From Octopus sinensis (lineage: Eukaryota), in contig NC_043010.1 in NCBI RefSeq assembly GCF_006345805.1, positions 66,030,001 through 66,094,000 on the forward strand: a stretch of DNA of 64,000 nucleotides. Direction: 5' to 3'. Position numbers and translations under genes: made by a program. Under the pieces are notes generated by a model. The model ran no database searches. It was not told the DNA's origin and saw only the letters and a list, made by a program, of their open reading frames with translations. Positions 3,705-61,340 of the stretch are shown one piece after another. How positions within the stretch are numbered: the first letter of the stretch is position 1; each line of letters begins with the position of its first letter.

Positions 3705-3736
<32 letters not shown>

Positions 3737-4436
3737 ATTAACATCCGCTTTCCATGCTAGCATGGGTTGGACGGTTCAACTGGGGTCTGGGAAGCCCGAA
3801 GGCTGCACCAGGCCCAGTCAGATCTGGCAGTGTTTCTACAGCTGGATGCCCTTCCTAACGCCAACCACTCCGTGAGTGTAGTGGGTCCTTTATATGTGCC
3901 ACCGACACAGGTGCCAGACGAGGCTGGCGAACGGCCACGCTCGGATGGTGCTTTTTACGTGCCACCAGCACGGAGGCCAGGCGATGCTGGTAACGGCCAC
4001 GATCGGATGGTGTTTGTTATGTGCCACCAGCACGGAGGCCAATCAATGCAGTGCTGGCTACAGCCACGTTCGGATGGCTCCCTTATGTGCCACCAGCACT
4101 GGTACCACAAACTACAAATTCCATTGACAAAGAGAATAAATTTCCATGAATGCCCAGGAGGGTCCCTATAGGTAATACAGAGTTTCTGTTGCTTAGGAGA
4201 CCTAATTAGCAGTGGAGCAGGAGGTTGTTCTGAATGTATAGTTGCTATAATAAGAACTGGCTGGAGAAAGTTCAGAGAACTATTATCTCTGTGGGGAATG
4301 AAAGTTTTCTCTCATATGATGCTTGCATGTGAACAGTAATACTACATGGTAGTGAGGTGTAAGCCGTGAATGCAGAGGACATGTAAAGACTAGAAAGAAA
4401 TGAAGACTGGAAGAAATGAAAGAAATGAAGAAATTA
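3490..4436 (+). pseudogene. Decayed RTE ORF fragment (Cys-rich insert plus RT C-terminal part), interrupted by an RTE 3' UTR copy
   Basis: Manual translation with stops/frameshifts: NLAETKILISKK..CLICRKEVGRDSI*CTQCKVWADKRCSGI...SFCCLGDLISSG..GWRKFRELL..AEDM*RLERNE. Confidence 0.7.
3706..4095 (-). mobile_element. RTE LINE 3' UTR fragment
   Basis: (CAT)n tail at 3706-3735, then the reverse-complemented family body. Confidence 0.8.
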
Positions 4437-5791: not shown

Positions 5792-6018
5792 GTGTGTTTG
5801 TGCGTGAGTATTTTGTGTCTTGTTTGTCCCCCCAACATCGTTTGACAACGGAAGCTGGTGTGTTTACGTCCCCATAACTCAGCGGTTCAGCAAAACAGGC
5901 CGATAGAATAAGTACTAGGCTTCCAAAGAGTAAGTCCTGGGGTCGATTTGCTCGACTAAAGGCAGTGTTCCAGCATGGCCACAGTCAAATGACTGAAACA
6001 AGTAAAAGAGAGTAAAAG
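5540..6018 (+). mobile_element. tRNA-derived SINE (family A), near full length with internal (TA)/(TG) microsatellite
   Basis: Head GGxGxAGGAGTGGCTGTGTGGTAAG...GGTTCC; tail GACTGAAACAAGTAAAAGAG; more than 15 copies in the window. Confidence 0.85.
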
Positions 6019-7010: not shown

Positions 7011-7411
7011 CTTTTACTCTTTTACTTGTTTCAGTCATCTGACTGTGGCCATGCTGGAGCAACGCCTTTAGTCGAGCAAATCGACCCCAGGACTTATTCG
7101 TTGTAAGCCTAGTATTTATTCTATCGGTCTCTTTTGTCGAACTGCTAAGTTACGGGGACGTAAACACACCAGCATCGGTTGTCAAGCGATGTTGTGAGGA
7201 CAAACACACAAACATACACACACACACATATATATATATACATATATACGACGGGCTTCTTTCAGTTTCCTTCTACCAAATCCACTCACAAGGCTTTGGT
7301 CAACCCGAGGCTATAGTAGAAGACACCTGCCCAAGATGCCACGCACTGAGACTGAACCCAGAACCATATGGTTGGTAAGCAAGCTACTTACCACACAGCC
7401 ACTCCTACGCC
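7011..7411 (-). mobile_element. SINE family A, full length
   Basis: Reverse complement of the family A consensus from CTTTTACTC tail to CTCCTACGCC head. Confidence 0.85.
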
Positions 7412-9612: not shown

Positions 9613-9952
9613 TATAAAATATTATTAGAGACAAAACCACTATTTTGCAAAACAAACAAGGAAAGACTTAATCAATACATAAAATTTTAATAAATAGTCA
9701 AAAAAACCGCCACTACAATTGTTACTTGTCTTGATCGACAATCTTCAGGTGGACTTCCAATAAGTCAGTTTCAAATTATGAAGTCATAATTTGAAACTGA
9801 CTTATTGGAAGTCCACCTGAAGATTGTCGATCAAGACAAGTAACAATTGTAGTGGCGGTTTTTTTGACTATTTATTAAAATTTTATGTATTGATTAAGTC
9901 TTTCCTTGTTTGTTTTGCAAAATAGTGGTTTTGTCTCTAATAATATTTTATA
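9613..9952. repeat. Perfect 340-bp palindrome (169-bp arms, 2-nt spacer)
   Basis: Base-by-base symmetry about 9782/9783 (paired coordinates sum to 19565). Confidence 0.95.
9813..9855 (+). ncRNA. Minimal type-I hammerhead-like fold with A13U core variant (mirror copy 9710-9752, -)
   Basis: CCAC-CTGAAGA-TTGTC-gatcaa-GACAA-GTAAC-aatt-GT-A-GTGG: stems I, II and palindromic stem III (ACAATTGT) all pair; GAAA reads GTAA. Confidence 0.6.
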
Positions 9953-10059
9953 ATATTTTACTATAAAATTGGATTTAATCCTAAATCTGATTTTTTCCCT
10001 GTAAATTTGGATTTATTCCCTAATATTTATTATATACATATATATATATATATACATAT

Positions 10060-10473
10060 GGTAAGTAGCTTGTCTACCAACCACATGGTTCCGGGTTCAG
10101 TCCCACTGTGTGGCACCTTGGGCAAGTGTCTTCCACTATAGCCTCGGGCCGACCAAAGCCTTGTGAGTGGATTTGGTAGACGGAAACTGAAAGAAGCCCG
10201 TCGTATATATGTATATATACGGCCGGATGGCTGAAACAAGTAAAAGAGTAAAAGAGAGAGTATATATGCGTGTGTGTTTGTGTGTCTGTGTTTGTCCCCT
10301 AGCATTGCTTGACAACCGATGCTGGTGTGTTTACGTCCCCGTCACTTAGCGGTTCGGCAAAATAGACCGATAGAATAAGTACTGGGCTTACAAAGAATAA
10401 GTCCCGGTGTTGATTTGCTTGACTAAAGGCGGTGCTCCAGCATGGCAGCAGCCGAATGACTGAAACAAGTAAA
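10060..10473 (+). mobile_element. SINE family A
   Basis: Family consensus from GGTAAGTAGCTTG to ACTGAAACAAGTAAAA, with an extra internal tail copy. Confidence 0.8.
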
Positions 10474-10509
10474 ATCATCATCATCATCATAATGCTAGCA
10501 TAGGTTGGA

Positions 10510-10672
10510 CGATATGCATACTTTGTAAAGTGGTTGGTGTTAGGAAGGGCATTCAGTCGTAGCAAACGATGCCAAATCAGACTGGAGTCTGGTGCAGCCT
10601 TCCAGCTTACCAGCCCTGGTCAAACCGTCCAACCCATGCCAGCATGGACAACAGACATTAAATGATGACGAT
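10510..10672 (+). mobile_element. RTE 3' end fragment
   Basis: GTGGTTGGTGTTAGGAAGGGCAT...AACCGTCCAACCCATGCCAGCATGG...ATGATGACGAT. Confidence 0.7.
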
Positions 10673-10769
10673 AAATTACATATATATATATACAAACACA
10701 TACATATATGAAAACAAACACACATGGATATGCATACACATATATCAGACTATACACTACATGTGTGCT

Positions 10770-10813
10770 CAGTAGTAGTAGTAGTAGTGGTAGTAGTAGT
10801 AGTAGTAGTAGTA

Positions 10814-10855
<42 letters not shown>

Positions 10856-10857
10856 TG

Positions 10858-10894
<37 letters not shown>

Positions 10895-11386
10895 TAGTAG
10901 TAGTAGTAGTGGTGGTAGTAGTAGTTGTGGTGGTGGTGGTGGTGGTGGTGGTGGTGGTGGTGGTGGTGGTGATGGTGGTGGTAAAAAAACAGCAGCAGCA
11001 GCATTAGGGCAGGGAGAAAGAGAGAGGGGAGGTTGAGGCTACATGTGGATGACACAGAGGGGTGGGGCACATATGCTGGTTGGCATGGTCACATTAATAA
11101 TATAAGTCCCATCTTCATCTCACTGTCCTCCTCTCCTCCTCCTCCTCCATCACCTCCTCCTCCTCCTCCATCACCTTCTCCTCCTCCTCTTCCTGTCATT
11201 GTCTGGCCTGAAACAAGTGAATCTGTTAAAAAGTGAGTTGGAGATAGGTTAGATGGGGGAGGGGGGTGGAAGAGGTGGTGAGGTGGTGGTGGTGGTGGTG
11301 GTGGTGGCAGTGAAGGGTGGCTGTGTTGTGATGTGATGGCGATGGCAGTGGAGGTGGTGGAGGAGTAACAGTGGTGACTATGGCGA

Positions 11387-11420
<34 letters not shown>

Positions 11421-11561
11421 GGTGGTAGTAGTGGTGGCAAACGTTAAGGAGGACCACAGCGATGATGATGATGATGATGATGATGACGACGACGATGGTG
11501 ATGATGATGATGGTGATGATGATGATGATGATGATGATGATGGTGGTGATGATGATGGTGG

Positions 11562-11592
<31 letters not shown>

Positions 11593-11638
11593 GGTGGTGG
11601 TACTAGTGTTGGCAAAGCCAAGGAGGACCACAGCGATA

Positions 11639-11671
<33 letters not shown>

Positions 11672-11680
11672 TTAGTTGAC
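10770..11680. repeat. Trinucleotide low-complexity block (GTA/GTG/CCT/GAT)
   Basis: Direct reading; source of the poly-V/M/D/H ORFs. Confidence 0.9.
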
Positions 11681-11984
11681 TGTGGTGGCAGTAGTGGGGC
11701 CGGAGGGGGGGAAGAGGAGGGAAGAGGGGGGAAGAGGGGTGGCAATGATGATGGGGGTAAATTGACTGGGTGGCAGAGTGTAGTCATGTGGAGGTGGGGT
11801 GTCCTGTGGAGGTGGGGTGCCGTGTGATGGTTGTGGTGGTGGTAGTGGTGAGAAATGAAGTGTGGTTTTCAAAGACCACCCCCCCCACCTCCCCCCCCCG
11901 GGTTGCAAAAATGATTAACTACTTCCAACAAGCAATATGGAAAAAAAAAAAATTATCTAGCTGCTTCTTCATTCTTCCTATATA

Positions 11985-12354
11985 CACCCGTGTGTGTGTG
12001 TGTGTGTGTGTGGTGTGTGTGTGTGTGTGTGTGTCTGTGTGTCTGCCTGAACGACAAAGAGATAGACAGTGTATGTGTATGTGTGCCTACGTGCGTGTGT
12101 GTGCGTATGTGCAGCGTGTGTGCGTATGTGCAGCGTGTGTGTGTGCGTATGTGCAGTGTGTGTGTGTGTGTGGTGTGTGCGTGTGTGTGTGTGCAGCGTG
12201 TGTGTGCGTGTGTGTGTGTGCGTGTGTGCAGCGTGTGTGTGTGTGTGCGTGTGTGCAGCGTGTGTGTGGTGTGTGCGTGTGTGCAGCGTGTGTGTGCGTG
12301 TGTGTGTGCGTATGTGCAGCGTGTGTGCGTATGTGCAGCGTGTGTGTGTGCGTA

Positions 12355-12387
<33 letters not shown>

Positions 12388-12530
12388 CGTATGTGCAGCG
12401 TGTGTGCAGCGTGTGTGTGTGTGCGTGTGTGCAGCGTGTGTGTGTGTGTGCGTGTGTGCAGCGTGTGTGTGTGTGTGTGTGCGTGTGTGCAGCGTGTGTG
12501 TGCGTGTGTGTGTGTGTGTGTGTCTCTGAG
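11985..12530. repeat. (GT)n tract with recurrent GCAGC/GCGTAT interruptions (minisatellite-like)
   Basis: Direct reading. Confidence 0.9.
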
Positions 12531-13066
12531 TGTTTCTTCACTCTACATACATGTTTGTGATTCTGCAAAAAGGGAGAGGGGGAAGGGAGAGGGGAGAGGG
12601 AGAAGGGGGGAGAGAGAGAAAGTGTGTGTGTGTGTGTGAGAGAGAGAGAAAAAGAGAGAGTAGGGGTCAGACAACGTGTGTCTGTCCTACCCTTCTTATG
12701 TATATACAGAGAGAGAGGGGGGGAGAGATTAATAGCTATGGGTCTGTCCCTGACATCTTTGTACATCTATCATTATTGCTTATCTCTCTAACCCCGACTT
12801 TCACCTGTGCCTGCCCACTTAACCAATCCATCATAGGGACCTAACGAGAAGGGATCCTCATCAGGGCTTTTTCTTAACCCTTTTTACACAAACATCCCCA
12901 CTTCAATTCCCCCCACCCTTCCACCACCCGGAATAACGAACCAGCAAAGTATACAACGTTATATATATCGTGTATCTTTTTCCTTGTTTCAGCCACACCA
13001 ACTCTGATTGTCAATAAATACATACATATACATATATATGATGATGATGATGATGATATATATATA

Positions 13067-13215
13067 GAGAGAGTGGTTGGCGTTAGGAAGGGCATCCAGC
13101 TGTAGAAACAGCCAAATCAAGAGTGGAGCCTGGTGCAGCCATCTGGTTCGCCAGCTCTCAGTCAAAATCGTCCAACCCATGCTAGCATGGAAAGCGGACG
13201 TTAAACGATGATGAT
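13067..13215 (+). mobile_element. RTE 3' end fragment
   Basis: GAGTGGTTGGCGTTAGGAAGGGCATCCAGCTGTAGAAAC...GGACGTTAAACGATGATGAT. Confidence 0.8.
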
Positions 13216-13260
13216 GATATATATATATACATGTATATATATATATGTATATATATATGA

Positions 13261-13312
<52 letters not shown>

Positions 13313-13392
13313 CATGTGTGTGTATATATATATATACGTGTATATATACATGTATATATTAATCAAAATAAAAACATGATTCAAAGGATTTA

Positions 13393-13480
13393 GCGGTACA
13401 TATGTTTCGGGCCTTTATTAGACGGTTTTATAACAATGCATAATTGATGTAAATGTGTGTCTATGGCCTTCTTCAGTCGC
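13393..13480 (-). ncRNA. Mirror-image hammerhead candidate on the opposite arm
   Basis: Reverse complement reads GCGA-CTGAAGA-A-GGCC...GGCC-C-GAAAC-atat-GT-A-CCGC; stem I has one A.C mismatch. Confidence 0.55.
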
Positions 13481-13588
13481 GTACCGATTTCGGGTTGGTG
13501 CCCCACTCTGTCGTACGCGACTATGAGGATTTGCATCCCCAACGTAAAACTTATAATGTAATATATGTCCTTGAAGTAGTAATTGTAC

Positions 13589-13676
13589 GTGGCTGAAGAA
13601 GGCCATAGACACACATTTACATCAATTATGCATTGTTATAAAACCATCTAATAAAGGCCCGAAACATATGTACCGC
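13589..13676 (+). ncRNA. Type-I hammerhead ribozyme candidate, canonical core
   Basis: GTGG-CTGAAGA-A-GGCC-[51 nt]-GGCC-C-GAAAC-atat-GT-A-CCGC; palindromic stem III ACATATGT; predicted cleavage after 13672. Confidence 0.65.
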
Positions 13677-13821
13677 TAAATCCTTTGAATCATGTTTTTA
13701 TTTTGATTAATATACTCTATCACCTACACCACTGAATGGTATATACAGGTGCTTACAACTATCAAGTATTCACCCTGAATTTTTGTACCCAACTATACAT
13801 GTATATATATATATATATTCC

Positions 13822-14092
13822 TGGACTGAGCTGTGTGTTGTGTTCTTGAGCAAGACACTTTATTTCATGTTGCTCCAGTTCACTCAGCTGTAGAAATGAG
13901 TTGCAACATCACTGGTGCCAAGCTGTATTGGCCTTTGCCTTTCCCTTGGATAACATCAGTGGTGTGGAGATTGGAGGCTGGCATGCATGGGCGACTGCTG
14001 GCCTTCCATAAACAACCTTGCCTGGACTTGTGCTTGGGAGGGTAACATTCTCGGTGCAATCCCACGGTCAGTCATGACCAAAGTGGGGGCCT

Positions 14093-14095
<3 letters not shown>
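13822..14095 (+). mobile_element. SINE-like element (family E), headless
   Basis: GTGTTCTTGAGCAAGACACTT...CCAGTTCACTCAGCTGTAGAAATGAG resembles SINE central-domain motifs; single copy in the window. Confidence 0.45.
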
Positions 14096-14109
<14 letters not shown>

Positions 14110-14130
<21 letters not shown>

Positions 14131-14440
14131 CCCCGGGCCAACCAATGCCTTGTGAGTGAATTTGGTAGACGGAAACTGAAAGAAGCCTGTCGTATATATG
14201 TATATATATGTATATATGTGTATGTGTGTGTGTTTGTGTGTGTGTCCCCTAGCATTGCTTGACAACCGATGCTGGTGTGTTTACGTCCCCGTCACTTAGC
14301 GGTTCGGCAAAAGAGACCGATAGAATAAGTACTGGGCTTACAAAAAAAGAATAAGTCCCGGGGTCGAGTTGCTCGATTAAAGGTGGTGCTCCAGCATGGC
14401 CGCAGTCAAAGGACTGAAACAAGTAAAAGAGTAAAAAGAG
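14110..14440 (+). mobile_element. SINE family A, 5'-truncated
   Basis: Family consensus ending in the GTAAAAGAG tail. Confidence 0.8.
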
Positions 14441-14444
14441 TGTG

Positions 14445-14490
<46 letters not shown>

Positions 14491-14536
14491 GCATATATCA
14501 GTACAAACAGTAAATAACTTGAAATACAAAAGCAAG

Positions 14537-14741
14537 TGAGTTCAATACGCAAACAAGAGAAACAAAGGGAAAACAGGACAAGTAATACAAAGAACGACCC
14601 TTCATCAGTTGTTGACTGTCAATCTGCTCCTCATTTCAAGCATTAGACAGCCGACAACTGACGAAAGGTCGTTCTTTATGCCTTGTGTGTTACCTGTCCT
14701 GTTTTCCATTTGTTTCTTTCATTGTTTGCGTATTCAACTCA
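14537..14741. repeat. Imperfect fold-back cassette (~85-95-bp arms, 25-nt spacer)
   Basis: TGAGTTCAATACGCAAAC... versus ...GTTTGCGTATTCAACTCA; CTGA(C/T)GA near the centre on each strand. Confidence 0.85.
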
Positions 14742-14808
14742 TTTGTTTTCATATTTCATGTTGTTTATGGTTTGTGACATCCTGTACCCATACATGCGTG
14801 TGTACGTG

Positions 14809-14840
<32 letters not shown>

Positions 14841-14850
14841 CATCATCATC

Positions 14851-14859
<9 letters not shown>

Positions 14860-14883
<24 letters not shown>

Positions 14884-15228
14884 CTGTGTGTTTGTGTGTC
14901 TGTGTTTGTCCCCCTAGCATTGCTTGACAACCGATGCTGGTGTGTTTACGTCCCCGTCACTTAGCGGTTCGGCAAAAGAGACCGATAGAATAAGTACTGG
15001 GCTTACAAAGAATAAGTCCCGGGGTCGATTTATCAGTCATTTGACTGCGGCCATGCGGGAGCTCCGCCTTTAGCTGCGCAAATCAACCCCGGGACTTATT
15101 CTTTGTAAGCCCAGTACTTATTCTATCGGTCTCTTTTGCCGAACCGCTAGGTGACGGGGACGTAAACACACCAGCATCGGTTGTCAAGCAATGCTAGGGG
15201 GACAAACACAGACACACAAACACACACA

Positions 15229-15271
<43 letters not shown>

Positions 15272-15320
15272 TATACGACAGGCTTCTTTCAGTTTCCATC
15301 TACCAAATCCACTCACATGC
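14860..15320. mobile_element. Tail-to-tail inverted pair of SINE A fragments
   Basis: 14860-15031 (+) and 15080-15255 (-) are near-perfect reverse complements with a 48-nt spacer. Confidence 0.9.
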
Positions 15321-15894
15321 ATGTGATTTAGGCTGTTTGGCTTGTGATCTTCCAAGAATTAATTCAATTTCTGATCCATGCAACAACACATGTGCTGTTG
15401 GGACAAGGGTGAAGGGGCCAAGAATTTGTTTATGCGAATTCAATTTTACATAGGCACCTAAAACAACTCACACGTAGTAAGTAGCTGGATGTACATATTC
15501 TCTGTTGAGTGGTTTGGTTGTTAAGAAGGGCACCCAACTGTAAAAATCCTGCCAAAACAGACACAGAAAAGCCTGGTGCAGGCTTCCGCCAGGCCGGCTC
15601 TTGTCAAACTGTCCCACCCATGCCAGCATAGAAAGCAGACATTAAACGATGATGATGATGACGATGACGATATAAACTTATACACACACAGACACACATC
15701 ATGCACATACATACAAGGGGTTGCTGAAAAGTTCCTGGCTTAAAGAGTATCACGAAAGGCCTAGTTGGAGGCCCAGCTTTCCAAGTTCTTTTACAGGGCT
15801 TAGGAAAATGGAAGGATTGTTAAAATCATAATTAATTGATCCTCTTACATACACTCCTCTCGTATCGTACATACATACGTACACACATACATAC

Positions 15895-16246
15895 ATGAGC
15901 ACCTTGTTTCCCTGGGCATGGATTCACTGAAGCTCCGGCGTCTGGCGACGGACTTGGTAAACACCCACAAGGTTATCAACCACCTCACCAACAACAACAC
16001 TGAACACCTTTTTGATCTCCATGTGTCCAACACACGTGGACATGCCTACAAAGTCAGAAAACAACACAGCTCCCATGAAGCATGGAATAAACTGCCTGCG
16101 TCAGTTGTTGACTGCCATGACACTGCATCCTTTAAGGCCCTCATGCTTTCCGAAATCCGCCGAAACTACACCTGATTATATATACACTTTAGATGAGTTG
16201 TAGTGCACCTGAGCACTGTACACAATTATTATTATTATTATTATTA
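15895..16246 (+). mobile_element. CR1/L2-type LINE 3' end with (ATT)n tail
   Basis: ORF 15918-16175: SLKLRRLATDL...TRGHAYKV...WNKLPASVV...SFK, the CR1/L2 ORF2 C-terminal pattern; tail ATTATTATT. Confidence 0.8.
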
Positions 16247-16963
16247 TACAAACATGCACATAGATACATAGATACATACATATCCTAAGTACATACGTAC
16301 ATACATACATACGTACATAGATACACATAGCCCTTAAACCCTCAAAATGTGACAGAAAATGTCAATTTCAGTGCATTTCTATAGAAACTATAACACGTGA
16401 TCAGCAGCTCCCCAAAAATCTGATTAAGGTACTTTCCTGTAAGACAAAATATTATTGCAAAAATGTATACATGAGAGGGGCCCAGGCATAGCTGTGTGGT
16501 AAGAAGTTTGCTTCACAACTATATGGTTCTGGGTTCAGTCCCATTGTGTGGCACGTACCTTCTACAATAGGCTTGGGCCAATGAGTGGAATTTGGTAGAT
16601 AGAAACTGAAAGAATCCCATCGTATATCTGTGTGTGTTTATGTGTGTTTGTTTTTGTGTGTGTGTGTGTATCCCCACCACCACCACCACCACTTGACAAC
16701 AGATGTTGGTTTGTTTACATCCCTGTAAATTAACAGCTCAGCAAACAAAATGCCAACAGAATAAGCATTAGGCTTTAAAATATATATATATATATATATA
16801 TACGGGTGTGTGTGATTGTGTATAGAAGAATATATTAATAAAAGGAATTCCAACCTTGTCTGATTTTCACGTTTTATTCACAATCTTATAATGATATAAG
16901 ATAATATAATATAATAGAATAAAATAAAATAAAATAATAGAATGTTAAATGTTCATTCTGATT

Positions 16964-17006
16964 GAACTAGTACTTTCATGCATTATATTCTTCAATCTTC
17001 AGGTTC
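16964..17006 (-). ncRNA. Minimal type-I hammerhead-like fold, canonical core, weak stem II
   Basis: GAAC-CTGAAGA-ttgaagaatataatgcat-GAAAG-ta-CT-A-GTTC; stem III palindrome AGTACT, perfect stem I. Confidence 0.5.
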
Positions 17007-17038
17007 ATGTAGGAGTGGTGACAGTCATGCTTCAAAAA

Positions 17039-17940
17039 TTCGAACTTTAGGCCTCACTGAGGAAATGACCAGAGACCGAGACCTTTGGAAATATTCTGTA
17101 CATGAGAAGACCAGGCAGGACAAGTGAGCCCAGCCCACTTATGAATGCCTTTCCTCCCTTGGACACAAAGACCGGTTGAGGCAAGCGAAGTCGATATAGA
17201 ACCTCATCCGACGACAGACACCCATCCCAACCCCCCATGCTTGCGAAGACATGTTGGGGCAAGCGAAATCGAAACCGAATTGAACCAGCCAGGATCCCTG
17301 GCCTGGTGGTACGTAAAAAGCACTATCCGACTCGGGGCCGTGGCACGTAAAATACTCCAATGCGACCGTACGACAGGCACCCATGCCAACCCCCTTGCTT
17401 GTGAAGACATGTTGGGGCAAGCGAAATCGAAATCGAATTGAACCAGCAGGATCCCTGGCCTGGTGGTACGTAAAAAGCACTATCCGACTCGGGGCCGTGG
17501 CACGTAAAATACTCCAATGCGGACCGTACGACAGGCACCCATGCCAACCCCCTTTGCTTGTGAAGACATGTTGGGGCCAAGCGAAATCGAAATCGAATTG
17601 AACCAGCCAGGATCCCTGGTCTGGTGGTACGTAAAAAGCACTATCCGACTCGTGGCCGATCCAGCACCGCCTCGACTGGCTTCCGTGCGGTGGCACATAA
17701 AATCACCCAATCTGACCGTGGCCGTTGCCAGCCCCGCCTGGCACCTGTGCAGGTGGCACGTAAAAAGCACACTACACTCACGGAGTGGTTGGCGTTAGGA
17801 AGGGCATCCAGCTGTAGAAACATTGCCAGATAAGACTGGAGCCTGGTGCAGCCTTCTGGCTTCCCAGAAACACCGGTCGAACCGTCCAACCCATGCTAGC
17901 ATGGAGAACGGACGTTAAACGACGATGATGATGATGATGA
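17039..17940 (+). mobile_element. RTE LINE 3' portion: ORF C-terminus plus 3' UTR with ~159-bp tandem repeats and (GAT)n tail
   Basis: IRTLGLTEEMTRDRDLWKYSVHEKTRQDK* at 17039-17128; repeat units start at 17260, 17418, 17578. Confidence 0.85.
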
Positions 17941-18114
17941 TTATATTATCTTATATCATTATAAGATTGTGAATAAAACGTGAAAATCAGACAAGGTTGG
18001 AATTCCTTTTATTAATATATATATATATATATATATTTAAACACACGCACATATATTTGCATTACAGTCAGTGCAGCTTCACCAGGGTTCACTTCGAGGA
18101 TGACCAAATGGACG

Positions 18115-18198
18115 GACCCTGATGAAGCTGCACTGACAATAATATAAGGTTGCATTTACAATAGTGAGTAGTCACTGCAGCAGAAACACTTGTAGGTC
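18115..18198 (+). ncRNA. Type-I hammerhead ribozyme candidate, canonical core, long stem II
   Basis: GACC-CTGATGA-A-GCTGCA(c)TGAC...GTCA(c)TGCAGC-A-GAAAC-actt-GT-A-GGTC; predicted cleavage after 18194. Confidence 0.7.
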
Positions 18199-18257
18199 AT
18201 TATAATATGCTGTATAAGATTATAAAAAAACTTTTGTGGATGTACCAGTCTCCATAC

Positions 18258-18460
18258 TCATCATCATCATCATCATGTTTAGCATCCATTTCCCATGCTG
18301 GCATGGGTTGGACGGTTTGACTGAGGTCTTGAGAGCCAACGGCTGCACCAGGCTCCAATCTGATCTGGCAATGTTTCTACAGCTGGATGCCCTTCCCAAT
18401 GCCACCCACTCTGAGACTATAGTGGGTGCTCTTTACATGCCACCGGCACAGGAGCCAGTC
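18258..18460 (-). mobile_element. RTE 3' end fragment
   Basis: (CAT)n tail followed by the reverse-complemented family body. Confidence 0.75.
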
Positions 18461-19337
18461 AGGTGACCCTGATGTACACCAGACAATTTTCACTGTCCAG
18501 TGAAGTGTACACAGAACTACCCATCGGGAGAATTCATGGAGTGATTACCATGAAATTGTAGTCACAGACATTAAATGCTGGTCATTGTAATTAGAGCTAA
18601 TACGGTACGTGCCAGGATAGTATATCCCTCCAAACTCACTTTTGTGTGTGTAGTCATACATATGAGTATCTGATTAAGAAGTCTGCTCCCCAACTACATC
18701 ATTCTGGATTCAGTTCCACAGTATGGTACCTTGGGCAAGTGTCTTTCATTATAGCCCCAAGCCAAGCAAAACCTTGTGAGTAGATTTGAAAGACAGAAAC
18801 TGTATATATACATATATATAATAAATGTGGAAACTAATTGCTGTGTGTCAGTGTGTCACACTTTGACCCCGCCCTCTCTCACTATTCAATGACACCTCTT
18901 TGTGCTGGGGTGAGAGTAAAATAGCAGGCATAGAGACGATGAGGGTGGTGGCAAAGACAAGCAGAAAGAGAGAAAGAGAGGAAAAAGAGGGAGAGAAAGA
19001 GAGAAAAAAAGTGGGAGAGAAAGAGAGACAAAGAAATGTAGAGAGAGTTGATGATATTTTATTAAAAGTAGTATTGATGGTGGCAGTGGGGATAATAATA
19101 AGAGAGGGAGAGAGAGAGAGTGGGTACATGAGAGAGAGAGAGTGAGATGAGGTACAACTTTCCTGGGCAGATATTCCTGTGGCCAGCATACTGAACCAAC
19201 TACTGAACACTATCAACATATATATAATTTACAGAAAATAAAAGACAAAGACAGGTGTAGAAACAACAAGCAGGTGTATTAGGAAGAATGGAAAAGTCTT
19301 TTAGGTTTCAAGCCTACACTCTTTGACAGAAAGGATT

Positions 19338-19760
19338 AACCCTTTCGTTACCAACCTGGCTGAAACTGCCTCTGGCTCTGTAGCATAAATATCTTGTTTT
19401 CATAAGTTTTGAATTAAAATCCTCCACCAAACCTTAGTCACAATTTTATGTTCCAAACACTAGCTGAATGATAACTAAGTTATTTTACTAAATTCTCTGT
19501 TATATTTAAAGTAATTGAAAGAAACTCAGAGCATCTCAAAATAAATGCAGTAATGAAAGGGTTAAAATATATAATAGAGAAACAATTCTTAACCCTTTTG
19601 ATACCAACCTGGCTGAAACTGCCTCTGGCTCTGAATAGAAATGCCTTGTTTTCATAAGTTTTGAATTAAAATCTTCCACCAAACCTTAGTCGCAATTTTA
19701 TGTTCCTAACACTAGCTTAATGATAACTAAGTTATTTTACTAAATTCATTGTTATATTAG
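19338..19760 (-). mobile_element. Inverted copy of the piggyBac-like MITE dimer
   Basis: Reverse complement of 2351-2828, including the inter-unit spacer AATATATAATAGAGAAACAATTCT. Confidence 0.7.
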
Positions 19761-19764
19761 GGTC

Positions 19765-19930
19765 TTATCAGAAGCAACTGTCATTACACTTTGCTGTAGG
19801 GTCCCCAAACATTACCCACAGAGACTATGGGTAGTATCCAAGTATTTTATTCTTGGCCTACCATTAGGTCTCCTGCAAGTTGACTCAGTGTGAAGACTTT
19901 TGTCTTGAGACTCTTTCCTGCAATATTCCA
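19765..19930 (-). pseudogene. RTE-type ORF C-terminal remnant
   Basis: CRRPNGRPRIKYLDTTHSLCG*CLG...MTVASDKTL resembles RTE GRRPRGRPRxRW. Confidence 0.5.
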
Positions 19931-19946
19931 CACATATAATGTGGAA

Positions 19947-20327
19947 GCACTCCGTCGGTTACGACGACGAGGGTTCCGGTTGATCCAAATCAACGGAACA
20001 GCCTGCTCGTGAAACTAACGCGTAAGTGGCTGAGCACTCCACAGACACGTGTACCCTTAACGTAGTTCTCAGGGATATTCAGCGTGACACAGAGAGTGAC
20101 AAGGCCGGCCCCTTGAAATACAAGTACAACAGAAACAGGAAGTAAGAGTGAGAGAAAGTTGTGGTGAAAGAGTACAGCAGGGATCACCACCATCCCCTGC
20201 CGGAGCCTCGTAGAGCCTTTAGGTGTTTTCGCTCAATAAACACTCACAACGCCCGGCCTGGGAATCGAAACCGCGATCCTATGACCGCGAGTCCGCTGCC
20301 CTAACCACTGGGCCATTGCGCCTCCAC
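19947..20327 (-). mobile_element. SINE family D, full length, low divergence
   Basis: Head (rc) GTGGAGGCGCAATGGCCCAGTGGTTAGGGCAGCGGACTCGCGGTCATAGGATCGCGGTTTCGATTCCC has tRNA A/B boxes. Confidence 0.85.
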
Positions 20328-20839
20328 ACGCATATAATATATACACACATAATTTAAACAAAAATGATCTGAGAAATAACTCAACGTGGCCAGTGGCATG
20401 TGTTTTGACAACATAGACATATACAGGTATATCAAATGTCATACAACATAAACTTGATCAATTAAATTATTTCTGCATCTAGGGGCTGTATTTTAATTTA
20501 ACTCATTAGCATTCAGATTAAATTTTATTACAATTCACGTTTACTGACATTGTTTTGAATTAATCTTGTACTTTTGAGATTCTGATGATGTATTGTATAC
20601 TTTTTGAATGACATTGTAGGGTAGGTGTGAGAGACCCAATCCAGTTGGTTTGAACATAAAACAGATAGAATATTTCGGCCAGATTTGGCCAGTTTAAATG
20701 CTAAGGAGTCAAACCAGTTCCATTTGAGAAGGAGAGATGATCCAATAAGGAAAAGGACAGGCTTGTCATCTGGAGGTAAGCAGTCAGTCATCAACACATG
20801 TTTATGACACACACACACATACATACACACATACACGCA

Positions 20840-21065
20840 TCTATTATATAAAATCCGTTCCGTCTGTCTGTGTGTGTGTGTGTCTTCTAGGATCTCGGGC
20901 ATCCTCCATCCGATTGCGCTCAAATTTGATATGTCGATACCGACGGTATCAGGGCGTGTATAAGTCTTGAAAAAATTACAAAAATCGATTCCAGGTGGGA
21001 ATGCGATCAATAAAGCCGTGGGAACGTGCATTTGTACGCGCAAGTACATCAGTCGAAATCCGTCT
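20840..21065 (+). mobile_element. Non-autonomous Helitron 5' fragment
   Basis: A|TCTATTATATAAAA..GTCTGTCTGTGTG..CCGATTGCGCTCAAATTT resembles the 5' end of the 45791-46741 element; no 3' hairpin-CTAG seen. Confidence 0.5.
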
Positions 21066-21222
21066 TTTGCTGGTGTCTCAAATTTAGGTTAAATCAGTGT
21101 TTCTCAAAGGGGAGGCCTATGGGACAGTCGGACAAGTTGTTTTGAGAAAATTTGGTTTAAATGTTTGACAACTCATCACCATCCATTGGGGGGGGGGGGC
21201 GTCTTGCACGTATATGTATATG

Positions 21223-21264
<42 letters not shown>

Positions 21265-21552
21265 TTTCTCTCTGACAGGTTTATGGTTGAGCCTGGAGAC
21301 CTCCAACATCACTAGCCCCTGGAATATATCTCTGTTCACCACTAATGGGACAGAGATGGCTGTTCACAAGTGTAAGCCCCATGGGTCAGAATGGCTGTTC
21401 CAGAGCATCTCCTTCACCATCCTCCAGGGGCAACGCCTTTTCTATTTTGTCTGCTCAGACCATGAGATGATCTGAATCACAGGGAATTTTACACTCCACT
21501 TCTTAATGTAAAGTTACTCCATATATATATTTAAACTAAAGCTCAACAGAAT

Positions 21553-21571
<19 letters not shown>

Positions 21572-21589
<18 letters not shown>

Positions 21590-22062
21590 GATATATATGG
21601 AAAAAAGTCAAGGTAGAAAATGCTAAAATAATTTTATCATAGAAAACATTTCAGTACCGGTTTCAGTCATTGAGATTTTTTCAACTGTAAGTATGGAAAA
21701 CAAATAAATTTTGGAAAAATTAAAAGAAAAGTATTTTAAAAGAATATTTGCATAGTATTCAAATACAAGGGGCATTTTACTTGTTTCTGCCTGTCTCTGT
21801 CTCTCTTGTTTACTCTTGTGCGTTCGAGGAGAGACAGAGACAGGCAGAAACAAGGAAAATGCCCCTTGTTTTTGAATACTATGCAAATATTCTTTTAAAA
21901 TACTTTTCTTTTAATTTTTCCAAAATTTAATTGTTTTCCATACTTACAGTTGAAAAAGTCTCAATGACTGAAACCGGTACTGAAATGTTTTTAATGATAA
22001 AATTATTTTAGCATTTTCTACCTTGACTTTTTTCCATATATATCTATATGTGTGTGTGTGTG
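21572..22062. repeat. Fold-back cassette: ~235-bp inverted arms, ~20-nt spacer, degenerate hammerhead fold in each arm
   Basis: Paired coordinates sum to 43634; CAG-TTGAAAA-AGTC-tcaat-GACT-GAAAC-cg-GT-A-CTG at 21947-21982, mirror at 21652-21687. Confidence 0.9.
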
Positions 22063-22767
22063 TTCTACTATATATATATATAAACATAACTGTTTTAACA
22101 TCCACGTTTCCATGCTTGCATGGGTCAGACATAATTCAGTGAGGCAGATTTTCTTCAGGTAATAACTTCTTGTTGCCAACCTTCACCTGTTTCCAAGTAA
22201 GGTAATATATTTCCTCTGGTCTGGATGTTTTTACAGACAACCGGAAATGAATGACCCCCCCCCCCCCGCCTCATATGACTGACAATTGTGTACAACTGTC
22301 ATGTGATGTCAAGAGAAGGATATGCAAACATACGTGTACATATATATGTAGCACCATCACCAGGTGTGGCTTTAGGCATGTGGTTCTGAGTTCAGTTCCA
22401 CTGCATGTCATTTTGGGCAAGCATCTTCTACTATAGGATTGGGCCATCACCTTGTGAATGGATTTGATAGATAGAAACTGAGTTCATTGTGTGAGTGTGT
22501 ATATATATTATATATATATATATATGTATATTTATATTATATATTATATTATTGGAAAACCTGAAGATTACTCAGCATCTTAAATCTGCTGTAATATTTA
22601 CAGCTTTTAATAAAATGTTGTAGTATGAAACAATTGTACTAAATTACCGGATCCATTCTTGTTGCTTATTTCTGATTATATATATATATATATATAAATA
22701 TATTGATAAAAATGGTAAGACAATGACAGAATGAAAGAGACCTCGATATTATGTAAATAGAGGAATT

Positions 22768-23001
22768 TATCTGTAAATGTAATATGTGACAATTATTCGG
22801 TAGCCATGATAAAACTCCGAGTTTTGGATGCCGAGGTGGAAATCCATGCCGCCATCTCTTCAGTTATCCGGCCATCAGAAACAATGCTATCCGATGGCCG
22901 GATAACTGAAGAGATAGCGGCGTGGATTTCCACCTCGGCATCCGCCACTCGGAGTTTTATTATGGCTACGGAATAATTGTCACATATCACATTTACAGAT
23001 A
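22768..23001. repeat. Fold-back cassette: 109-bp arms, 16-nt spacer
   Basis: Paired coordinates sum to 45769; CTGAAGA near the centre on both strands. Confidence 0.9.
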
Positions 23002-23017
23002 TATATATATATATATA

Positions 23018-23190
23018 TCATCATCATCGTTTAACGTCCGTTCTCCATGCTAGCATGGGTTGGACGGTTCGACCTGGGATCTGGGAAGCCAGAAGGCTGC
23101 ACCAGGCTCCGGTCTTATCTGGCAATGTTTCTACAGCTGGATGCCCTTCCTAACGCCAACCACTCCGTGAGTGTAGTGGGTGCTTTTTAT
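23018..23190 (-). mobile_element. RTE 3' end fragment
   Basis: CATCATCATCGTTTAACGTCC... family body. Confidence 0.8.
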
Positions 23191-26269: not shown

Positions 26270-28280
<2,011 letters not shown>

Positions 28281-28599
28281 TTGACGATGTAGTTATGTTT
28301 ACATAAGAATCTATGGTCCATGTGTGTATATATATTAGGCGTAGAGAGATATACTCGAACCTACGTACGTATGTATAGATAGATGTATATTCATTCGTCG
28401 ATCGAGCCTGTCAATTATAATAACAGTGAAAAAAAAGAAAAAAAGCTGGCCTTGCTTTGGCTCAGAAAGTTTTTTTGAAGACGGCCCAGCAGTAGTAGCC
28501 AAGAGTAAAATCCCATCCAAAGAAGAACGACGATGGAAGAATAGTAGAATAATAAACTCTCCCCCGCCCCGTAACATTACAACCACTACTCCTCTCTTT

Positions 28600-28900
28600 C
28601 TTTCTCTCTCTCTCTCTTTCTATCTTTCTATCTCACTCTTTCTCTCTCACATGCTTGCTCCTCACTCTCACGTTGTCTCCTCTCCCTCTCTCTCTCTCTC
28701 TCTAACGCACTTTCTCTTCCCTCTCACTCTTTCTCTCTCACATGCTTGCTCCTCACTCTCACGTTGTCTCCTCTCTCTCTCTCTCTCTAACACACTTTCT
28801 ATCTCACTCTTTCTCTCTCACATGCTTGCTCCTCACTCTCACGTTGTCTCCTCTCTCTCTCTCTCTCTCTCTCTAACAAACTTTGTCTTCCCTCTCACAC
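28600..28900. repeat. CT-rich minisatellite, ~3 units
   Basis: CTCTCACATGCTTGCTCCTCACTCTCACGTTGTCTCC occurs three times. Confidence 0.85.
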
Positions 28901-29719: not shown

Positions 29720-29728
29720 ATAGGTAGG

Positions 29729-29776
<48 letters not shown>

Positions 29777-29782
29777 CGGATG

Positions 29783-29832
<50 letters not shown>

Positions 29833-29895
29833 CAGATAGATAGATAGATAGATGGATGGATAGATAGATAGGTAGATAGATAGGTAGATAGATAA

Positions 29896-29937
<42 letters not shown>

Positions 29938-29973
29938 GGATGGATGGATAGATAGACAGACAGACAGACAGAC

Positions 29974-30032
<59 letters not shown>
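29720..30032. repeat. (GATA)n microsatellite
   Basis: Direct reading. Confidence 0.95.
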
Positions 30033-48391: not shown

Positions 48392-48795
48392 TTATAATGT
48401 GTGTGTGTGTATACATAATAATAATAATATTAGGGAGTATAGCTCCAAACTTACAAGGAAAAATTCGATTACGTATTAAATCAAATTTCACAGTATAAAT
48501 ATATAAAATATGAATTAGAGATAAAATCACTGTTATGCAACTCAAACAGGGATAGACATAAACCAATACATAAATAACAAATAATATTAGTTGCTTATTT
48601 ATTTAACTATTATCATTAACCTGAAGATTGACTATAATTTTAGTTTGAATCTATTTCAATTGAATTTAAACTTAATTGTAATTCGAATTTAAGTATAGCC
48701 ATGAAACGTACGTACTGGTTTTACTTATATTATATTTATCATTCTTTTTATACTTGTTGAAAAAAAAAGTTATATTATATATATATATATTATAT

Positions 48796-61089: not shown

Positions 61090-61320
61090 ACATCATCATC
61101 ATCATCATCATCATCGCTTGACGTCCGTTCTCCATATCGGGGATCTGGGAAGCCAGAAGGCTGCACCAGGCTCCAGTTTTATCTGGCAATGTTTCTACAG
61201 CTGGATGCCCTTCCTAACGCCAACCACTCCGTGAGTGTAGTGGGTGCTTTTTACGTGCCACCCGCACAGGTGCCAGGCAAGGCTGGCAACGGCCACGGTC
61301 GGATTGGTGTATTTTACGTG
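61090..61320 (-). mobile_element. RTE 3' end fragment
   Basis: (CAT)n tail plus family body. Confidence 0.75.
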
Positions 61321-61340
61321 CCAATTGATTTATATTGAAG

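What the first reader, a model, noticed from the sequence alone, without database searches (positions are those of the whole stretch)
9613..23001. Cluster of unrelated fold-back cassettes, most carrying outward-facing minimal hammerhead folds
Seen: at least seven inverted-repeat cassettes with no mutual sequence similarity lie within 13.4 kb (9613, 13355, 14537, 16830, 18067, 21572, 22768). In five of them a type-I hammerhead layout reads from the centre outward: stem I - CUGANGA - stem II - GAAA - 2-bp stem III with a palindromic or near-palindromic loop - NUH - stem I. Several arms end ~40-100 nt past the predicted cleavage site, next to (TA)n or (CA)n. Established: minimal type-I hammerheads with palindromic, dimer-forming stem III occur in Penelope-like element (PLE) pseudo-LTRs (Cervera & De la Pena 2014), and PLE insertions often carry inverted ends. 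Inference: these are ORF-less PLE/retrozyme-like insertion products from several families, reduced to ribozyme end plus inversion. A read-through transcript would bury the ribozyme in long dsRNA (a likely ADAR/Dicer substrate in a cephalopod), while a transcript starting in the spacer could self-cleave.
Basis: partly seen in the sequence, partly recalled or inferred. Interest (0 to 1): 0.85.

Follow-up and report, generated by a model that had tools for sequence, protein, structure and literature searches.

The report
Head-to-head hammerhead retroelement fragments
A 13-kb stretch holds several short, unrelated DNA palindromes, each most likely two back-to-back copies of a small mobile-element end that carries a minimal hammerhead-ribozyme-like motif; this is a known by-product of Penelope-like retrotransposons, so it is largely ordinary.

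Summary
The palindromes are real. Seven unrelated fold-back cassettes, plus one inverted SINE pair, lie between 9.6 and 23 kb. They hold the five longest non-microsatellite tight inverted repeats in the 64-kb window.

A type-I hammerhead (HHR) layout pointing outward is present, but less cleanly than claimed:
- Canonical cores: cassettes 13355 (both arms), 16830 (one arm, weak stem II), 18067 (one arm), and a solo copy at 22561.
- Variant cores: 9613 has GUAA in place of GAAA (A13U). 21572 has UUGAAAA, the published U3/A8 variant.
- Degenerate or absent: 22768 is degenerate. 14537 keeps only the CUGAYGA box.

My descriptors find 2-6 motifs, against 0.06-0.3 expected in shuffles and 0-1 in a reversed-sequence control. 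Rfam hammerhead models find nothing.

In 5 of 8 palindromes the box lies 8-33 nt from the inversion junction (P ~1e-8). Three cassettes carry a one-sided 67-84-nt 3' extension next to (TA)n.

These traits match published minimal HHRs of Penelope-like elements (PLEs) and their inverted 5'-truncated insertions. No RT/GIY-YIG ORF lies in the window, and family copies elsewhere could not be searched, so the PLE link is inferred. Cleavage and dsRNA/ADAR effects are untested.

Verdict: a new member of a known kind, of modest interest.

The parts
9613..9952 (.). Cassette c1: perfect palindrome, 169-nt arms, 2-nt gap. HHR-like motifs at 9813-9855(+) and 9752-9710(-): ccac CUGAAGA uuguc-gaucaa-gacaa GUAA caauug UA gugg. 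The core carries A13U.
   Evidence: The motif's MFE fold has stems I and II.
9953..10027 (+). One-sided 75-nt 3' extension of the right arm of c1, ending at (TA)n. It belongs to the element, because the solo copy at 48410-48583 also has it.
13355..13714 (.). Cassette c2: 130-nt arms, 98%, 100-nt spacer. HHR-like motifs at 13589-13676(+) and 13480-13393(-): gugg CUGAAGA a-ggcc...ggcc-c GAAA cauaug UA ccgc. The minus-strand copy has a stem I of 3 bp plus a mismatch. About 84 nt lie between the right arm and the next (TA)n (13715-13798).
14503..14775 (.). Cassette c3: old palindrome (75%) between two (TA)n runs. It has only outward CUGAYGA boxes at 14658(+) and 14608(-), and no GAAA half.
16794..18056 (.). 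Cassette c4: arms 16794-16910 and 17940-18056. The left-pointing copy runs on to an HHR-like motif at 17007-16963(-): ugaac CUGAAGA ...(weak stem II) GAAA guac UA guuca. The interval also holds a 158-nt tandem repeat and a (GAT)n-tailed SINE.
18061..18253 (+). Cassette c5: a short inverted piece (18061-18143) plus a full HHR-like motif at 18115-18198(+): gacc CUGAUGA a-gcugcacugac...gucacugcagc-a GAAA cacuug UA gguc. The left arm has CUGGUGA and stops after about 22 nt.
21571..22063 (.). Cassette c6: 235-nt arms, 97%, 23-nt gap. Compact HHR-like motifs at 21947-21982(+) and 21687-21652(-): cag UUGAAAA aguc-ucaau-gacu GAAA ccgg UA cug (U3/A8 core variant). The minus copy has a G-to-A change in stem II. 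The inverted repeat runs into (TA)n(CA)n-like tails.
22551..22674 (+). Solo short element between two (TA)n runs. Its core, at 22561-22638, is CUGAAGA u-uacu...agua-u GAAA caauug UA. It has no stem I. The sequences around its core boxes are identical to those of c1 (ACCUGAAGAUU, AACAAUUGUA).
22748..23021 (.). Cassette c7: 132-nt arms, 87%, 10-nt gap. Degenerate motifs at 22906-22981(+) and 22863-22788(-): CUGAAGA ... (G/C)GAAUAAUUGUC. About 67 nt of extra sequence lie on the left side only (22698-22764), next to (TA)n.
48410..48583 (-). 5'-truncated solo relative of c1 (78-81% identity) covering only the 3'-terminal ~175 nt. It ends at (TA)n(CA)n, as c1 does.

Best explanation
These are dead, ORF-less insertion products of several families of short retroelements that carry the minimal type-I hammerhead typical of Penelope-like elements (PLEs). 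Each arm is one short cDNA copy. It runs from a 3' end 36-176 nt downstream of the ribozyme's predicted cut site, back through the ribozyme, to a 5' end usually only 8-33 nt upstream of the CUGANGA box.

Two such copies were laid down head-to-head (5' ends joined, 3' ends outward) in (TA)n/(CA)n microsatellite DNA. The most likely reason is that a PLE-type enzyme cuts and extends both strands of the target. Alternatively, the first cDNA snapped back on itself at the 5' end of the RNA.

Two alternative reverse-transcription start sites would explain the 67-84-nt extension found on one side only. The arms then diverged neutrally (100% down to 75% identity), so the insertions are of different ages.

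Shown: the anatomy and its statistics. Inferred: the enzyme, the both-strand or snap-back step, and any ribozyme activity.

The ribozyme is probably not needed for insertion and is probably inactive in most copies.
For: 1. Motifs exceed chance.
- 2 strict hits against 0.06 in shuffles.
- 6 against 0.10.
- 3 against 0.2-0.3 with the palindromic-helix-III descriptor, which also allows the U3/A8 box.
- The reversed-sequence control gives 0-1.

2. Features that the descriptors did not require match the published PLE minimal HHR (PMC4209133).
- Helix I is 4-5 bp.
- There is an unpaired base after A9 in c2, c4, c5 and the solo copy.
- Loop 3 is perfectly palindromic in 3 of the 4 loci found without requiring it (AAUU, AUAU, AAUU).
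- c6 has the U3/A8 core variant.
- That paper also reports dual HHRs on opposite strands 100-700 bp apart.

3. Every motif points outward. In 5 of 8 palindromes the box lies 8-33 nt from the inner edge (binomial P ~1e-8).

4. A 5'-truncated solo relative of c1 shares its 3' end next to a microsatellite. The solo element at 22551-22674 starts 10 nt before the box.

5. One-sided 3' extensions of 75, ~84 and ~67 nt occur in c1, c2 and c7. This is the 'tail at one end' signature described for PLEs (PMC8557442) and tied to two RT start sites (PMC11167929).

6. A purified PLE protein cuts and extends both target strands, prefers AT-rich DNA, and starts RT 85-92 nt past the HHR cut site (PMC11167929).

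7. Inverted 5'-truncated copies and a microsatellite bias are standard for PLEs.

8. Predicted dimers form an intermolecular helix III in c1, c2 and c6.
Against: - No RT or GIY-YIG ORF, or any Pfam domain of that kind, was found in the window. None of these families is shown to be linked to an autonomous PLE.
- Rfam hammerhead models do not detect any of the motifs.
- Cores deviate from the canon. c1 has A13U and c7 is degenerate. c2, c4, c5 and the solo copy have a mismatch or an extra base where G10.1-C11.1 should be. Stem II of c2, c5 and the solo copy is a 57-61-nt domain, and c4 has almost no stem II.
- The observed extensions (67-84 nt) are longer than the 30-40 bp described for PLE tails.
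- In c6 the inverted repeat includes (CA)n on one flank and (TG)n on the other. Simple insertion into one microsatellite does not predict this.
- SINEs in the same window also end in (CA)n(TA)n, so the association with microsatellites is not specific to PLEs.
- My relaxed descriptors were shaped after seeing the first hits.
Confidence: 0.65

Rival explanations
1. They are SINE-like, hammerhead-bearing non-autonomous retroposons (like Schistosoma Sm-alpha) mobilised by a LINE of this genome rather than by a PLE. The palindromes arise by snap-back or twin priming during LINE-type target-primed reverse transcription.
For: - The abundant SINE of the window also ends in (CA)n(TA)n.
- The arms of c1, c4 and c6 carry similar microsatellite-like tails.
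- Octopus genomes hold very active microsatellite-targeting Dong-R4 LINEs (PMC13282606).
- No PLE ORF lies nearby.
Against: - By established knowledge, twin priming yields an inverted segment from a different, more 5' part of the RNA. It does not yield two copies of the same region.
- The motif type (minimal, palindromic helix III, bulge after A9, U3/A8 variant) and the one-sided extension are the published PLE signatures.
- None of the more than 15 SINE copies in the window shows an HHR box at a junction. The only tight SINE palindrome (14855-15256) has none.
Confidence: 0.15
2. They are fold-back MITEs, that is, non-autonomous DNA transposons whose long terminal inverted repeats make up nearly the whole element, inserted at TA sites. 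The hammerhead-like strings would be incidental.
For: - The size (270-490 bp), the AT-rich (TA) flanks and the near-full-length inverted repeats look like hairpin MITEs.
- Another palindrome at 61341-61599 lacks any HHR and may be a MITE.
- MITEs and Tc1-mariner elements are annotated in octopus genomes.
Against: - The outer ends of c1 are not symmetric. The right copy has 75 more nt that belong to the element, as the solo copy shows.
- That solo relative is a 5'-truncated single arm, not a palindrome.
- The box lies at a fixed short distance from the centre in five unrelated families (P ~1e-8), and the full motifs exceed chance. Neither is expected for unrelated MITEs.
- No target-site duplication can be read in the microsatellite flanks.
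Confidence: 0.1
3. They are artefacts or non-element palindromes: assembly chimeras (missed-adapter long reads), or local inverted duplications from hairpin-capped breaks or template switching at microsatellites, with chance hammerhead-like strings.
For: - c1 is 100% identical with a 2-nt gap.
- The region is rich in (TA)n, which can itself form hairpins.
- PLE-type structures are known to trouble assemblies (PMC8557442).
Against: - Arm identities of 98, 97, 87-90, 87 and 75% imply real, old events.
- The palindromes are only 0.3-0.5 kb and are embedded in unique flanks.
- Random duplications would not place an outward CUGANGA box 8-33 nt from the centre five times. Nor would they give full motifs at 20-60 times the shuffle expectation.
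Confidence: 0.05

Closest known systems
Minimal hammerhead ribozymes of Penelope-like elements (Cervera & De la Pena 2014, PMC4209133)
   Same: - Type-I layout with helix I of 4-5 bp.
- An unpaired base between A9 and 10.1.
- Helix III of 1-2 bp with a palindromic loop that allows dimers.
- The U3/A8 core covariant.
- High sequence heterogeneity between families.
- Most copies are solo or truncated.
- Pairs occur on opposite strands 100-700 bp apart.
   Different: - Here stem II is either very long (a 57-61-nt domain in three loci) or nearly absent (c4).
- The conserved G10.1-C11.1 pair is replaced by a mismatch or flanked by an extra base.
- One family has A13U.
- No copy lies in a pLTR next to an RT-GIY-YIG ORF.
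PLE insertion architecture: inverted 5'-truncated copy, one-sided tail, microsatellite bias (Craig et al. 2021, PMC8557442; Frangieh et al. 2024, PMC11167929)
   Same: - Head-to-head inverted copies.
- An extension at one end only.
- (TA)n/(CA)n targets.
- The 3' end lies tens of nt to about 180 nt past the HHR cut site. In the anole PLE, RT starts 85-92 nt past it, and the protein extends both target strands.
   Different: - There is no full-length copy and no pLTR tandem.
- Both arms are cut down to 130-250 nt.
- The extension is 67-84 nt rather than 30-40 bp.
- The 5' ends cluster just upstream of the ribozyme instead of being scattered.
Metazoan non-LTR retrozymes (Cervera & de la Pena 2020, PMC7229834; Li et al. 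2026 preprint, 10.64898/2026.07.22.740005)
   Same: Short, AT-rich, ORF-less units with a type-I HHR. They have been proposed to derive from PLE pLTRs.
   Different: - Retrozymes are head-to-tail tandem repeats of 150-450 bp with canonical HHRs, and they produce circular RNAs.
- These units are inverted pairs or solo copies with minimal HHRs.
- The cut site is internal to each copy, not at its boundary.
Sm-alpha SINE-like elements of Schistosoma, which carry an active hammerhead (from my own knowledge; cited in PMC4209133)
   Same: A short non-autonomous retroposon that carries a type-I HHR.
   Different: Sm-alpha has a canonical, active HHR and is dispersed or tandem, not palindromic.

Membership tests
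Hammerhead ribozyme (type I) | Conserved core C3 U4 G5 A6 N7 G8 A9 / G12 A13 A14 / A15.1-U16.1 / H17 | tested here: inconclusive
   - Met in c2 (both arms), c4L, c5R and the solo copy at 22561.
- c6 has the published U3/A8 covariant.
- c1 has A13U.
- c7 has GGAAU/CGAAU.
- c3 lacks the 3' half.

Hammerhead ribozyme (type I) | Three helices around the core, with helix I open | tested here: inconclusive
   - Stem I is 4-5 bp in c1, c2R, c4L and c5R, 3 bp in c6, and absent in the solo copy.
- Stem II is 4-11 bp, except 2 bp in c4.
- The HHR-like fold is the MFE for c1R, c2L, c5R and c6R, but not for c2R or c4L.

Hammerhead ribozyme (type I) | Match to the Rfam hammerhead covariance models | tested here: not met
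   No hammerhead hit at gathering score, at E<=10 on 15 kb, or on subregions of 171 and 356 nt. The only hits were generic hairpin (miRNA-model) matches.
Hammerhead ribozyme (type I) | Self-cleavage after H17 | not testable with these tools
   This needs in vitro transcription of monomer and dimer constructs.
PLE minimal HHR (Cervera & De la Pena 2014) | Short helix I (4-5 bp), an unpaired base between 9 and 10.1, and palindromic 15.2-16.2 / loop 3 | tested here: met
   - The bulge is present in c2, c4, c5 and the solo copy.
- The helix III segments are ACAAUUGU, ACAUAUGU, AGUACU, ACCGGU and ACACUUGU (near-palindromic).

- Predicted dimers pair through helix III.
PLE minimal HHR (Cervera & De la Pena 2014) | Conserved G10.1-C11.1 pair | tested here: not met
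   - c1 has U-A and c6 has A-U.
- c2, c4, c5 and the solo copy have a mismatch (A.C, U.U, A.A, U.U) or, read another way, an extra base before G12.

PLE minimal HHR (Cervera & De la Pena 2014) | Located in the pLTR of an element with an RT-GIY-YIG ORF (at least in some family copies) | not testable with these tools
   No such ORF lies in the window. The host genome is not in any searchable collection: a metagenome scan with the SINE core found nothing, and the window's ORFs are not in the protein collection.
Penelope-like element insertion | An inverted 5'-truncated copy joined 5' to 5', with the 3' ends outward | tested here: met
   All motifs point outward. The box lies 8-33 nt from the junction in 5 of 8 palindromes.
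Penelope-like element insertion | An optional 'tail' extension at one end, and an AT-rich or microsatellite target | tested here: met
   - One-sided extensions: c1 has 75 nt, confirmed as part of the element by the 48-kb copy. c2 has ~84 nt. c7 has ~67 nt.
- They are longer than the published 30-40 bp.
- Flanks are (TA)n/(CA)n.
Penelope-like element insertion | RT plus GIY-YIG endonuclease ORF, and a pLTR formed by a partial tandem | tested here: not met
   - No ORF is longer than 323 aa.
- The ten ORFs I scanned (157-323 aa, including the two longest) gave no relevant Pfam domain.
- There is no direct tandem of the arms.

Non-LTR retrozyme | Head-to-tail tandem repeats of 150-450 bp, each with a canonical type-I HHR showing loop 1-loop 2 contacts | tested here: not met
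   The copies are inverted or solo, and no tandem array of these units exists. Helix I is open and only 3-5 bp, with no loop 1.
MITE / fold-back DNA transposon | Symmetric terminal inverted repeats at both outer ends, plus a target-site duplication | tested here: not met
   The c1 termini are asymmetric by 75 nt of element sequence. Target-site duplications are unreadable in the microsatellite flanks.

The most novel reading that the evidence does not exclude
The short units are not random 5' truncations. They would be a distinct class of ribozyme-led, ORF-less retroelements with three properties:
- The template RNA begins about 10-30 nt upstream of the hammerhead.
- Reverse transcription starts at one of two internal sites 70-85 nt apart.
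- Pairing of two template RNAs through the palindromic helix III of the minimal hammerhead lets a dimeric PLE enzyme insert two copies head-to-head.

Under this reading the ribozyme fold would serve as an RNA dimerisation and positioning module rather than as a nuclease. That would fit the youngest cassette, which has a dead core (A13U).
Probability: 0.12. Interest if true: 0.7.

Novelty: new member of a known kind. Interest (0 to 1): 0.3.

Why it matters
If the reading is right, this window is a compact natural record of how PLE-type machinery inserts short templates. It shows both-strand priming, two alternative start sites, a defined RNA 5' end just upstream of the ribozyme, and mobilisation of a template whose ribozyme core is mutated. 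That agrees with in vitro data showing that HHR catalysis is not needed for insertion (PMC11167929).

For genome annotation, it explains a class of tight palindromes that score as false miRNA hairpins in Rfam-type scans and that repeat libraries may leave unclassified.

It does not reveal a new kind of element or ribozyme.

Tried and rejected
- Rfam scans at gathering and permissive thresholds, including on small subregions, gave no hammerhead. They gave only generic hairpin matches to miRNA models, which I reject as artefacts of any long inverted repeat.
- A sequence-based alignment and RNAalifold run on four motifs gave no consensus structure, because the stem II sequences are unrelated. Covariation across families is circular, since the descriptor demands pairing, so I did not use it.
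- Differences between the two arms of a cassette are too few to test selection. In c6 a stem II pair is broken. In c7 an A-U pair becomes G.U. In c2 stem I is altered.
- A search for PLE proteins found no ORF longer than 323 aa and no relevant Pfam hit.
- Attempts to place the window in an organism, or to find family copies elsewhere, failed. The window's ORFs are not in the protein collection. The abundant SINE core has no match in metagenome contigs. The phage, plasmid, E. coli, bacterial-genome and viral collections were not searched, being irrelevant to an animal genome.
- Supplementary files of the two key papers are not held, so I could not compare with published mollusc HHR sequences.
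- I looked for a type-II or type-III permutation, or a split HHR spanning the centre, in c3 and c7. None fits.
- Candidates at 20577-20651 (GAGA core) and 1796-1866 (AUGAUGA box inside a microsatellite) were judged to be chance.
- tRNA-like heads: none found.

Full report
OBSERVATION

- c1: 9613-9781/9784-9952, 169-nt arms, 100%, 2-nt gap.
- c2: 13355-13484/13585-13714, 130 nt, 98%, 100-nt spacer.
- c3: about 14503-14775, 75%.
- c4: 16794-16910/17940-18056, 117 nt, 87%, 1029-nt interval.
- c5: 18061-18143, short, 72%.
- c6: 21571-21805/21829-22063, 235 nt, 97%, 23-nt gap.
- c7: 22748-22879/22890-23021, 132 nt, 87%, 10-nt gap.

An eighth tight palindrome, 14855-15256, is an inverted pair of an abundant SINE. 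It is not part of the phenomenon.

Sensitive BLAST shows no similarity between cassettes. In the whole 64-kb window, the five longest tight non-microsatellite inverted repeats all lie in this 13.4-kb stretch. Weaker palindromes do exist elsewhere, for example at 61341-61599 and 35048-35166.

HAMMERHEAD LAYOUT

Rfam finds no hammerhead at gathering score, at E<=10 over 9-24 kb, or on subregions of 171 and 356 nt. All Rfam matches are generic hairpin hits to miRNA models.

I wrote a type-I descriptor requiring:
- stem I of at least 4 bp,
- CUGANGA,
- stem II of at least 3 bp with up to one unpaired base on either side,
- GAAA,
- stem III of at least 2 bp,
- U followed by H.

It finds exactly two sites in both strands of the window, 13589-13676(+) and 18115-18198(+). 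Dinucleotide shuffles give 0.06.

Relaxing one feature at a time adds the following:
- Both arms of c1, at 9813-9855(+) and 9752-9710(-), with GUAA in place of GAAA.
- The second arm of c2, at 13480-13393(-).
- c4's left-pointing copy, at 17007-16963(-), with a 5-bp stem I, helix III AGUACU, and a stem II of only 2 bp.
- Both arms of c6, at 21947-21982(+) and 21687-21652(-), with UUGAAAA. This is the U3/A8 covariant reported for Schistosoma PLEs.
- A solo copy at 22561-22638(+) that lacks stem I.

Observed against expected: 6 against 0.10 and 3 against 0.2-0.3. A reversed-sequence control, which keeps composition and palindromes, gives 0-1.

c7 has CUGAAGA and then (G/C)GAAUAAUUGUC, which is a degenerate core. 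c3 has only the CUGAYGA box.

Three cassettes (c2, c4, c5) have canonical cores.

FEATURES THE DESCRIPTORS DID NOT ASK FOR

1. Loop 3 is perfectly palindromic in three of the four loci found without requiring it (AAUU, AUAU, AAUU). Helix III is AGUACU in c4 and ACCGGU in c6.
2. An unpaired base follows A9 in c2, c4, c5 and the solo copy.
3. Every motif points outward.
4. In 5 of 8 palindromes the CUGANGA box starts 8-33 nt from the inner edge of the arm (binomial P ~1e-8). The solo element likewise starts about 10 nt before the box. So the 5' boundary of the copied unit is not random. In c6 and c4 the copy runs further upstream.
5. The predicted cut sites (after 9851, 13672, 16968(-), 18194, 21979, 22638) lie 36-176 nt from the element's outer end, beyond which come (TA)n/(CA)n.
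6. c1's right arm has 75 nt (9953-10027) that the left arm lacks. A 5'-truncated solo relative at 48410-48583 (78-81% identity) contains this stretch and ends at the same point next to a microsatellite. The stretch is therefore element sequence, and copies share a 3' end while differing at the 5' end.
7. c2 has about 84 nt (13715-13798) and c7 about 67 nt (22698-22764) of one-sided sequence between the arm and the next (TA)n.

FOLDING

- In isolation the MFE has stems I and II for c1R, c2L, c5R and c6R, but not for c2R or c4L.
- Two copies are predicted to pair through helix III in c1, c2 and c6.
- RNA spanning a whole cassette folds into a near-perfect hairpin (c1 -272 kcal/mol, 99% paired).

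WHAT IT MOST LIKELY IS

The anatomy matches published descriptions point by point.
- Cervera & De la Pena 2014 (PMC4209133) describe the minimal HHRs of PLEs. Helix I is 4-5 bp, there is an extra nucleotide between 9 and 10.1, and helix III/loop 3 is tiny and palindromic, which allows dimers. They also report a U3/A8 variant, extreme heterogeneity, mostly solo or truncated copies, and pairs on opposite strands 100-700 bp apart.
- Craig et al. 2021 (PMC8557442) describe strong 5' truncation, an inverted 5'-truncated copy that forms inverted repeats, a tail often present at only one end, HHRs near the 3' end, and a bias for (TA)n/(CA)n.
- Frangieh et al. 2024 (PMC11167929) show four things for a purified PLE protein. 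It cuts and extends both target strands. It prefers AT-rich DNA. It starts reverse transcription internally at two adjacent sites 85-92 nt beyond the HHR cut site, with the tail being the sequence between those sites. It inserts templates whose HHR is catalytically dead.

I therefore read each arm as one short cDNA. The palindrome is either two cDNAs made from the two ends of one double-strand break or a snap-back of one cDNA. The one-sided extension reflects use of the distal start site.

The arm identities (100, 98, 97, ~88, 87, 75%) show independent events of different ages.

c1, the youngest cassette, carries A13U in both arms. Its close motif relative at 22561 has GAAA. This fits mobilisation without catalysis.

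LIMITS

- No RT or GIY-YIG ORF or domain was found in the window.
- I could not search the source genome, so the PLE link rests on resemblance of architecture, not on homology.
- The cores deviate from the PLE consensus at 10.1/11.1.
- Three loci have a 57-61-nt stem II domain.
- The extensions are about twice the published tail length.
- In c6 the repeat runs into microsatellite-like tails of opposite polarity on the two sides. That fits snap-back, or a tailed template, better than simple insertion into one microsatellite.
- SINEs here also end in (CA)n(TA)n, so a LINE-driven, SINE-like alternative keeps some weight.
- The MITE reading is disfavoured by c1's asymmetric termini and its truncated solo relative.
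- Artefact and random-duplication readings are disfavoured by arm divergence and by the position statistics.

COMPARISON AND NOVELTY

These work like, and probably are, ORF-less PLE-type minimal-HHR insertions. They are not retrozymes in the defined sense, because there is no head-to-tail tandem (PMC7229834).

Octopus genomes are known to hold many Penelope families (PMC13282606), but I could not confirm the organism.

The kind is known. The specific families, the tight 8-33-nt spacing between junction and box, and the 67-84-nt one-sided extensions are details worth a genome-wide check.

Ribozyme activity, dsRNA editing and spacer-initiated transcripts remain untested.

Noticed in passing
window 14855-15256; also 5804-5996, 7031-7248, 10261-10463, 14193-14417, 36085-36303, 42555-42781, 59048-59275, 62793-63015 and others: An abundant SINE-like repeat of about 225 nt, with more than 15 copies at 76-96% identity. 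It ends in a (CA)n(TA)n tail, and one tight inverted pair lies inside the flagged region. It has no tRNA-like head by ARAGORN. Its tails may seed the (TA)n runs that the hammerhead elements sit in.
   Followed up: partly
window 17640-17940, 1524-1815, 3716-4011, 18254-18458, 23017-23189, 61096-61323, 62051-62332: A second repeat family that ends in (GAT)n. One copy lies inside cassette c4, next to a 158-nt tandem repeat of 2.8 units (17211-17658). Inverted pairs with facing tails occur at 1542-2133 and 17738-18458.
   Followed up: partly
window 48619-48690: A CCUGAAGAUUGAC box sits 36 nt from the truncated c1-family copy and points the opposite way, followed by UAAUUGUA. It may be the decayed second arm of another head-to-head pair of that family.
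   Followed up: partly
window 61341-61599: A 268-nt palindrome (79%) outside the flagged region. It has no hammerhead layout and no microsatellite flanks, and it may be a MITE. So not every palindrome here belongs to the hammerhead class.
   Followed up: partly
window 9700-9870, 21760-21875, 22843-22926, 18061-18143: The palindrome centres score 35-84 bits against many unrelated Rfam miRNA-precursor models, always below gathering score. This is a generic hairpin artefact that could mislead miRNA annotation.
   Followed up: yes
window 10771-10982, 11461-11601, 11990-12523, 26626-30032: Dense simple repeats: (AGT)n/(GTG)n, (GAT)n, a 534-nt (GT)n, (AGAT)n/(ATAG)n arrays and a purine-rich 31-mer. 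They account for the strong GC-skew swings between 26 and 30 kb and for the spurious long ORFs there.
   Followed up: partly
window 13486-13584: The 100-nt spacer of c2 contains a third, diverged partial copy of the sequence just upstream of the box (GTACGCGACTATGAGGA, against GTACGCGACTGAAGA in the left arm). This suggests filler or a template switch at the junction.
   Followed up: no
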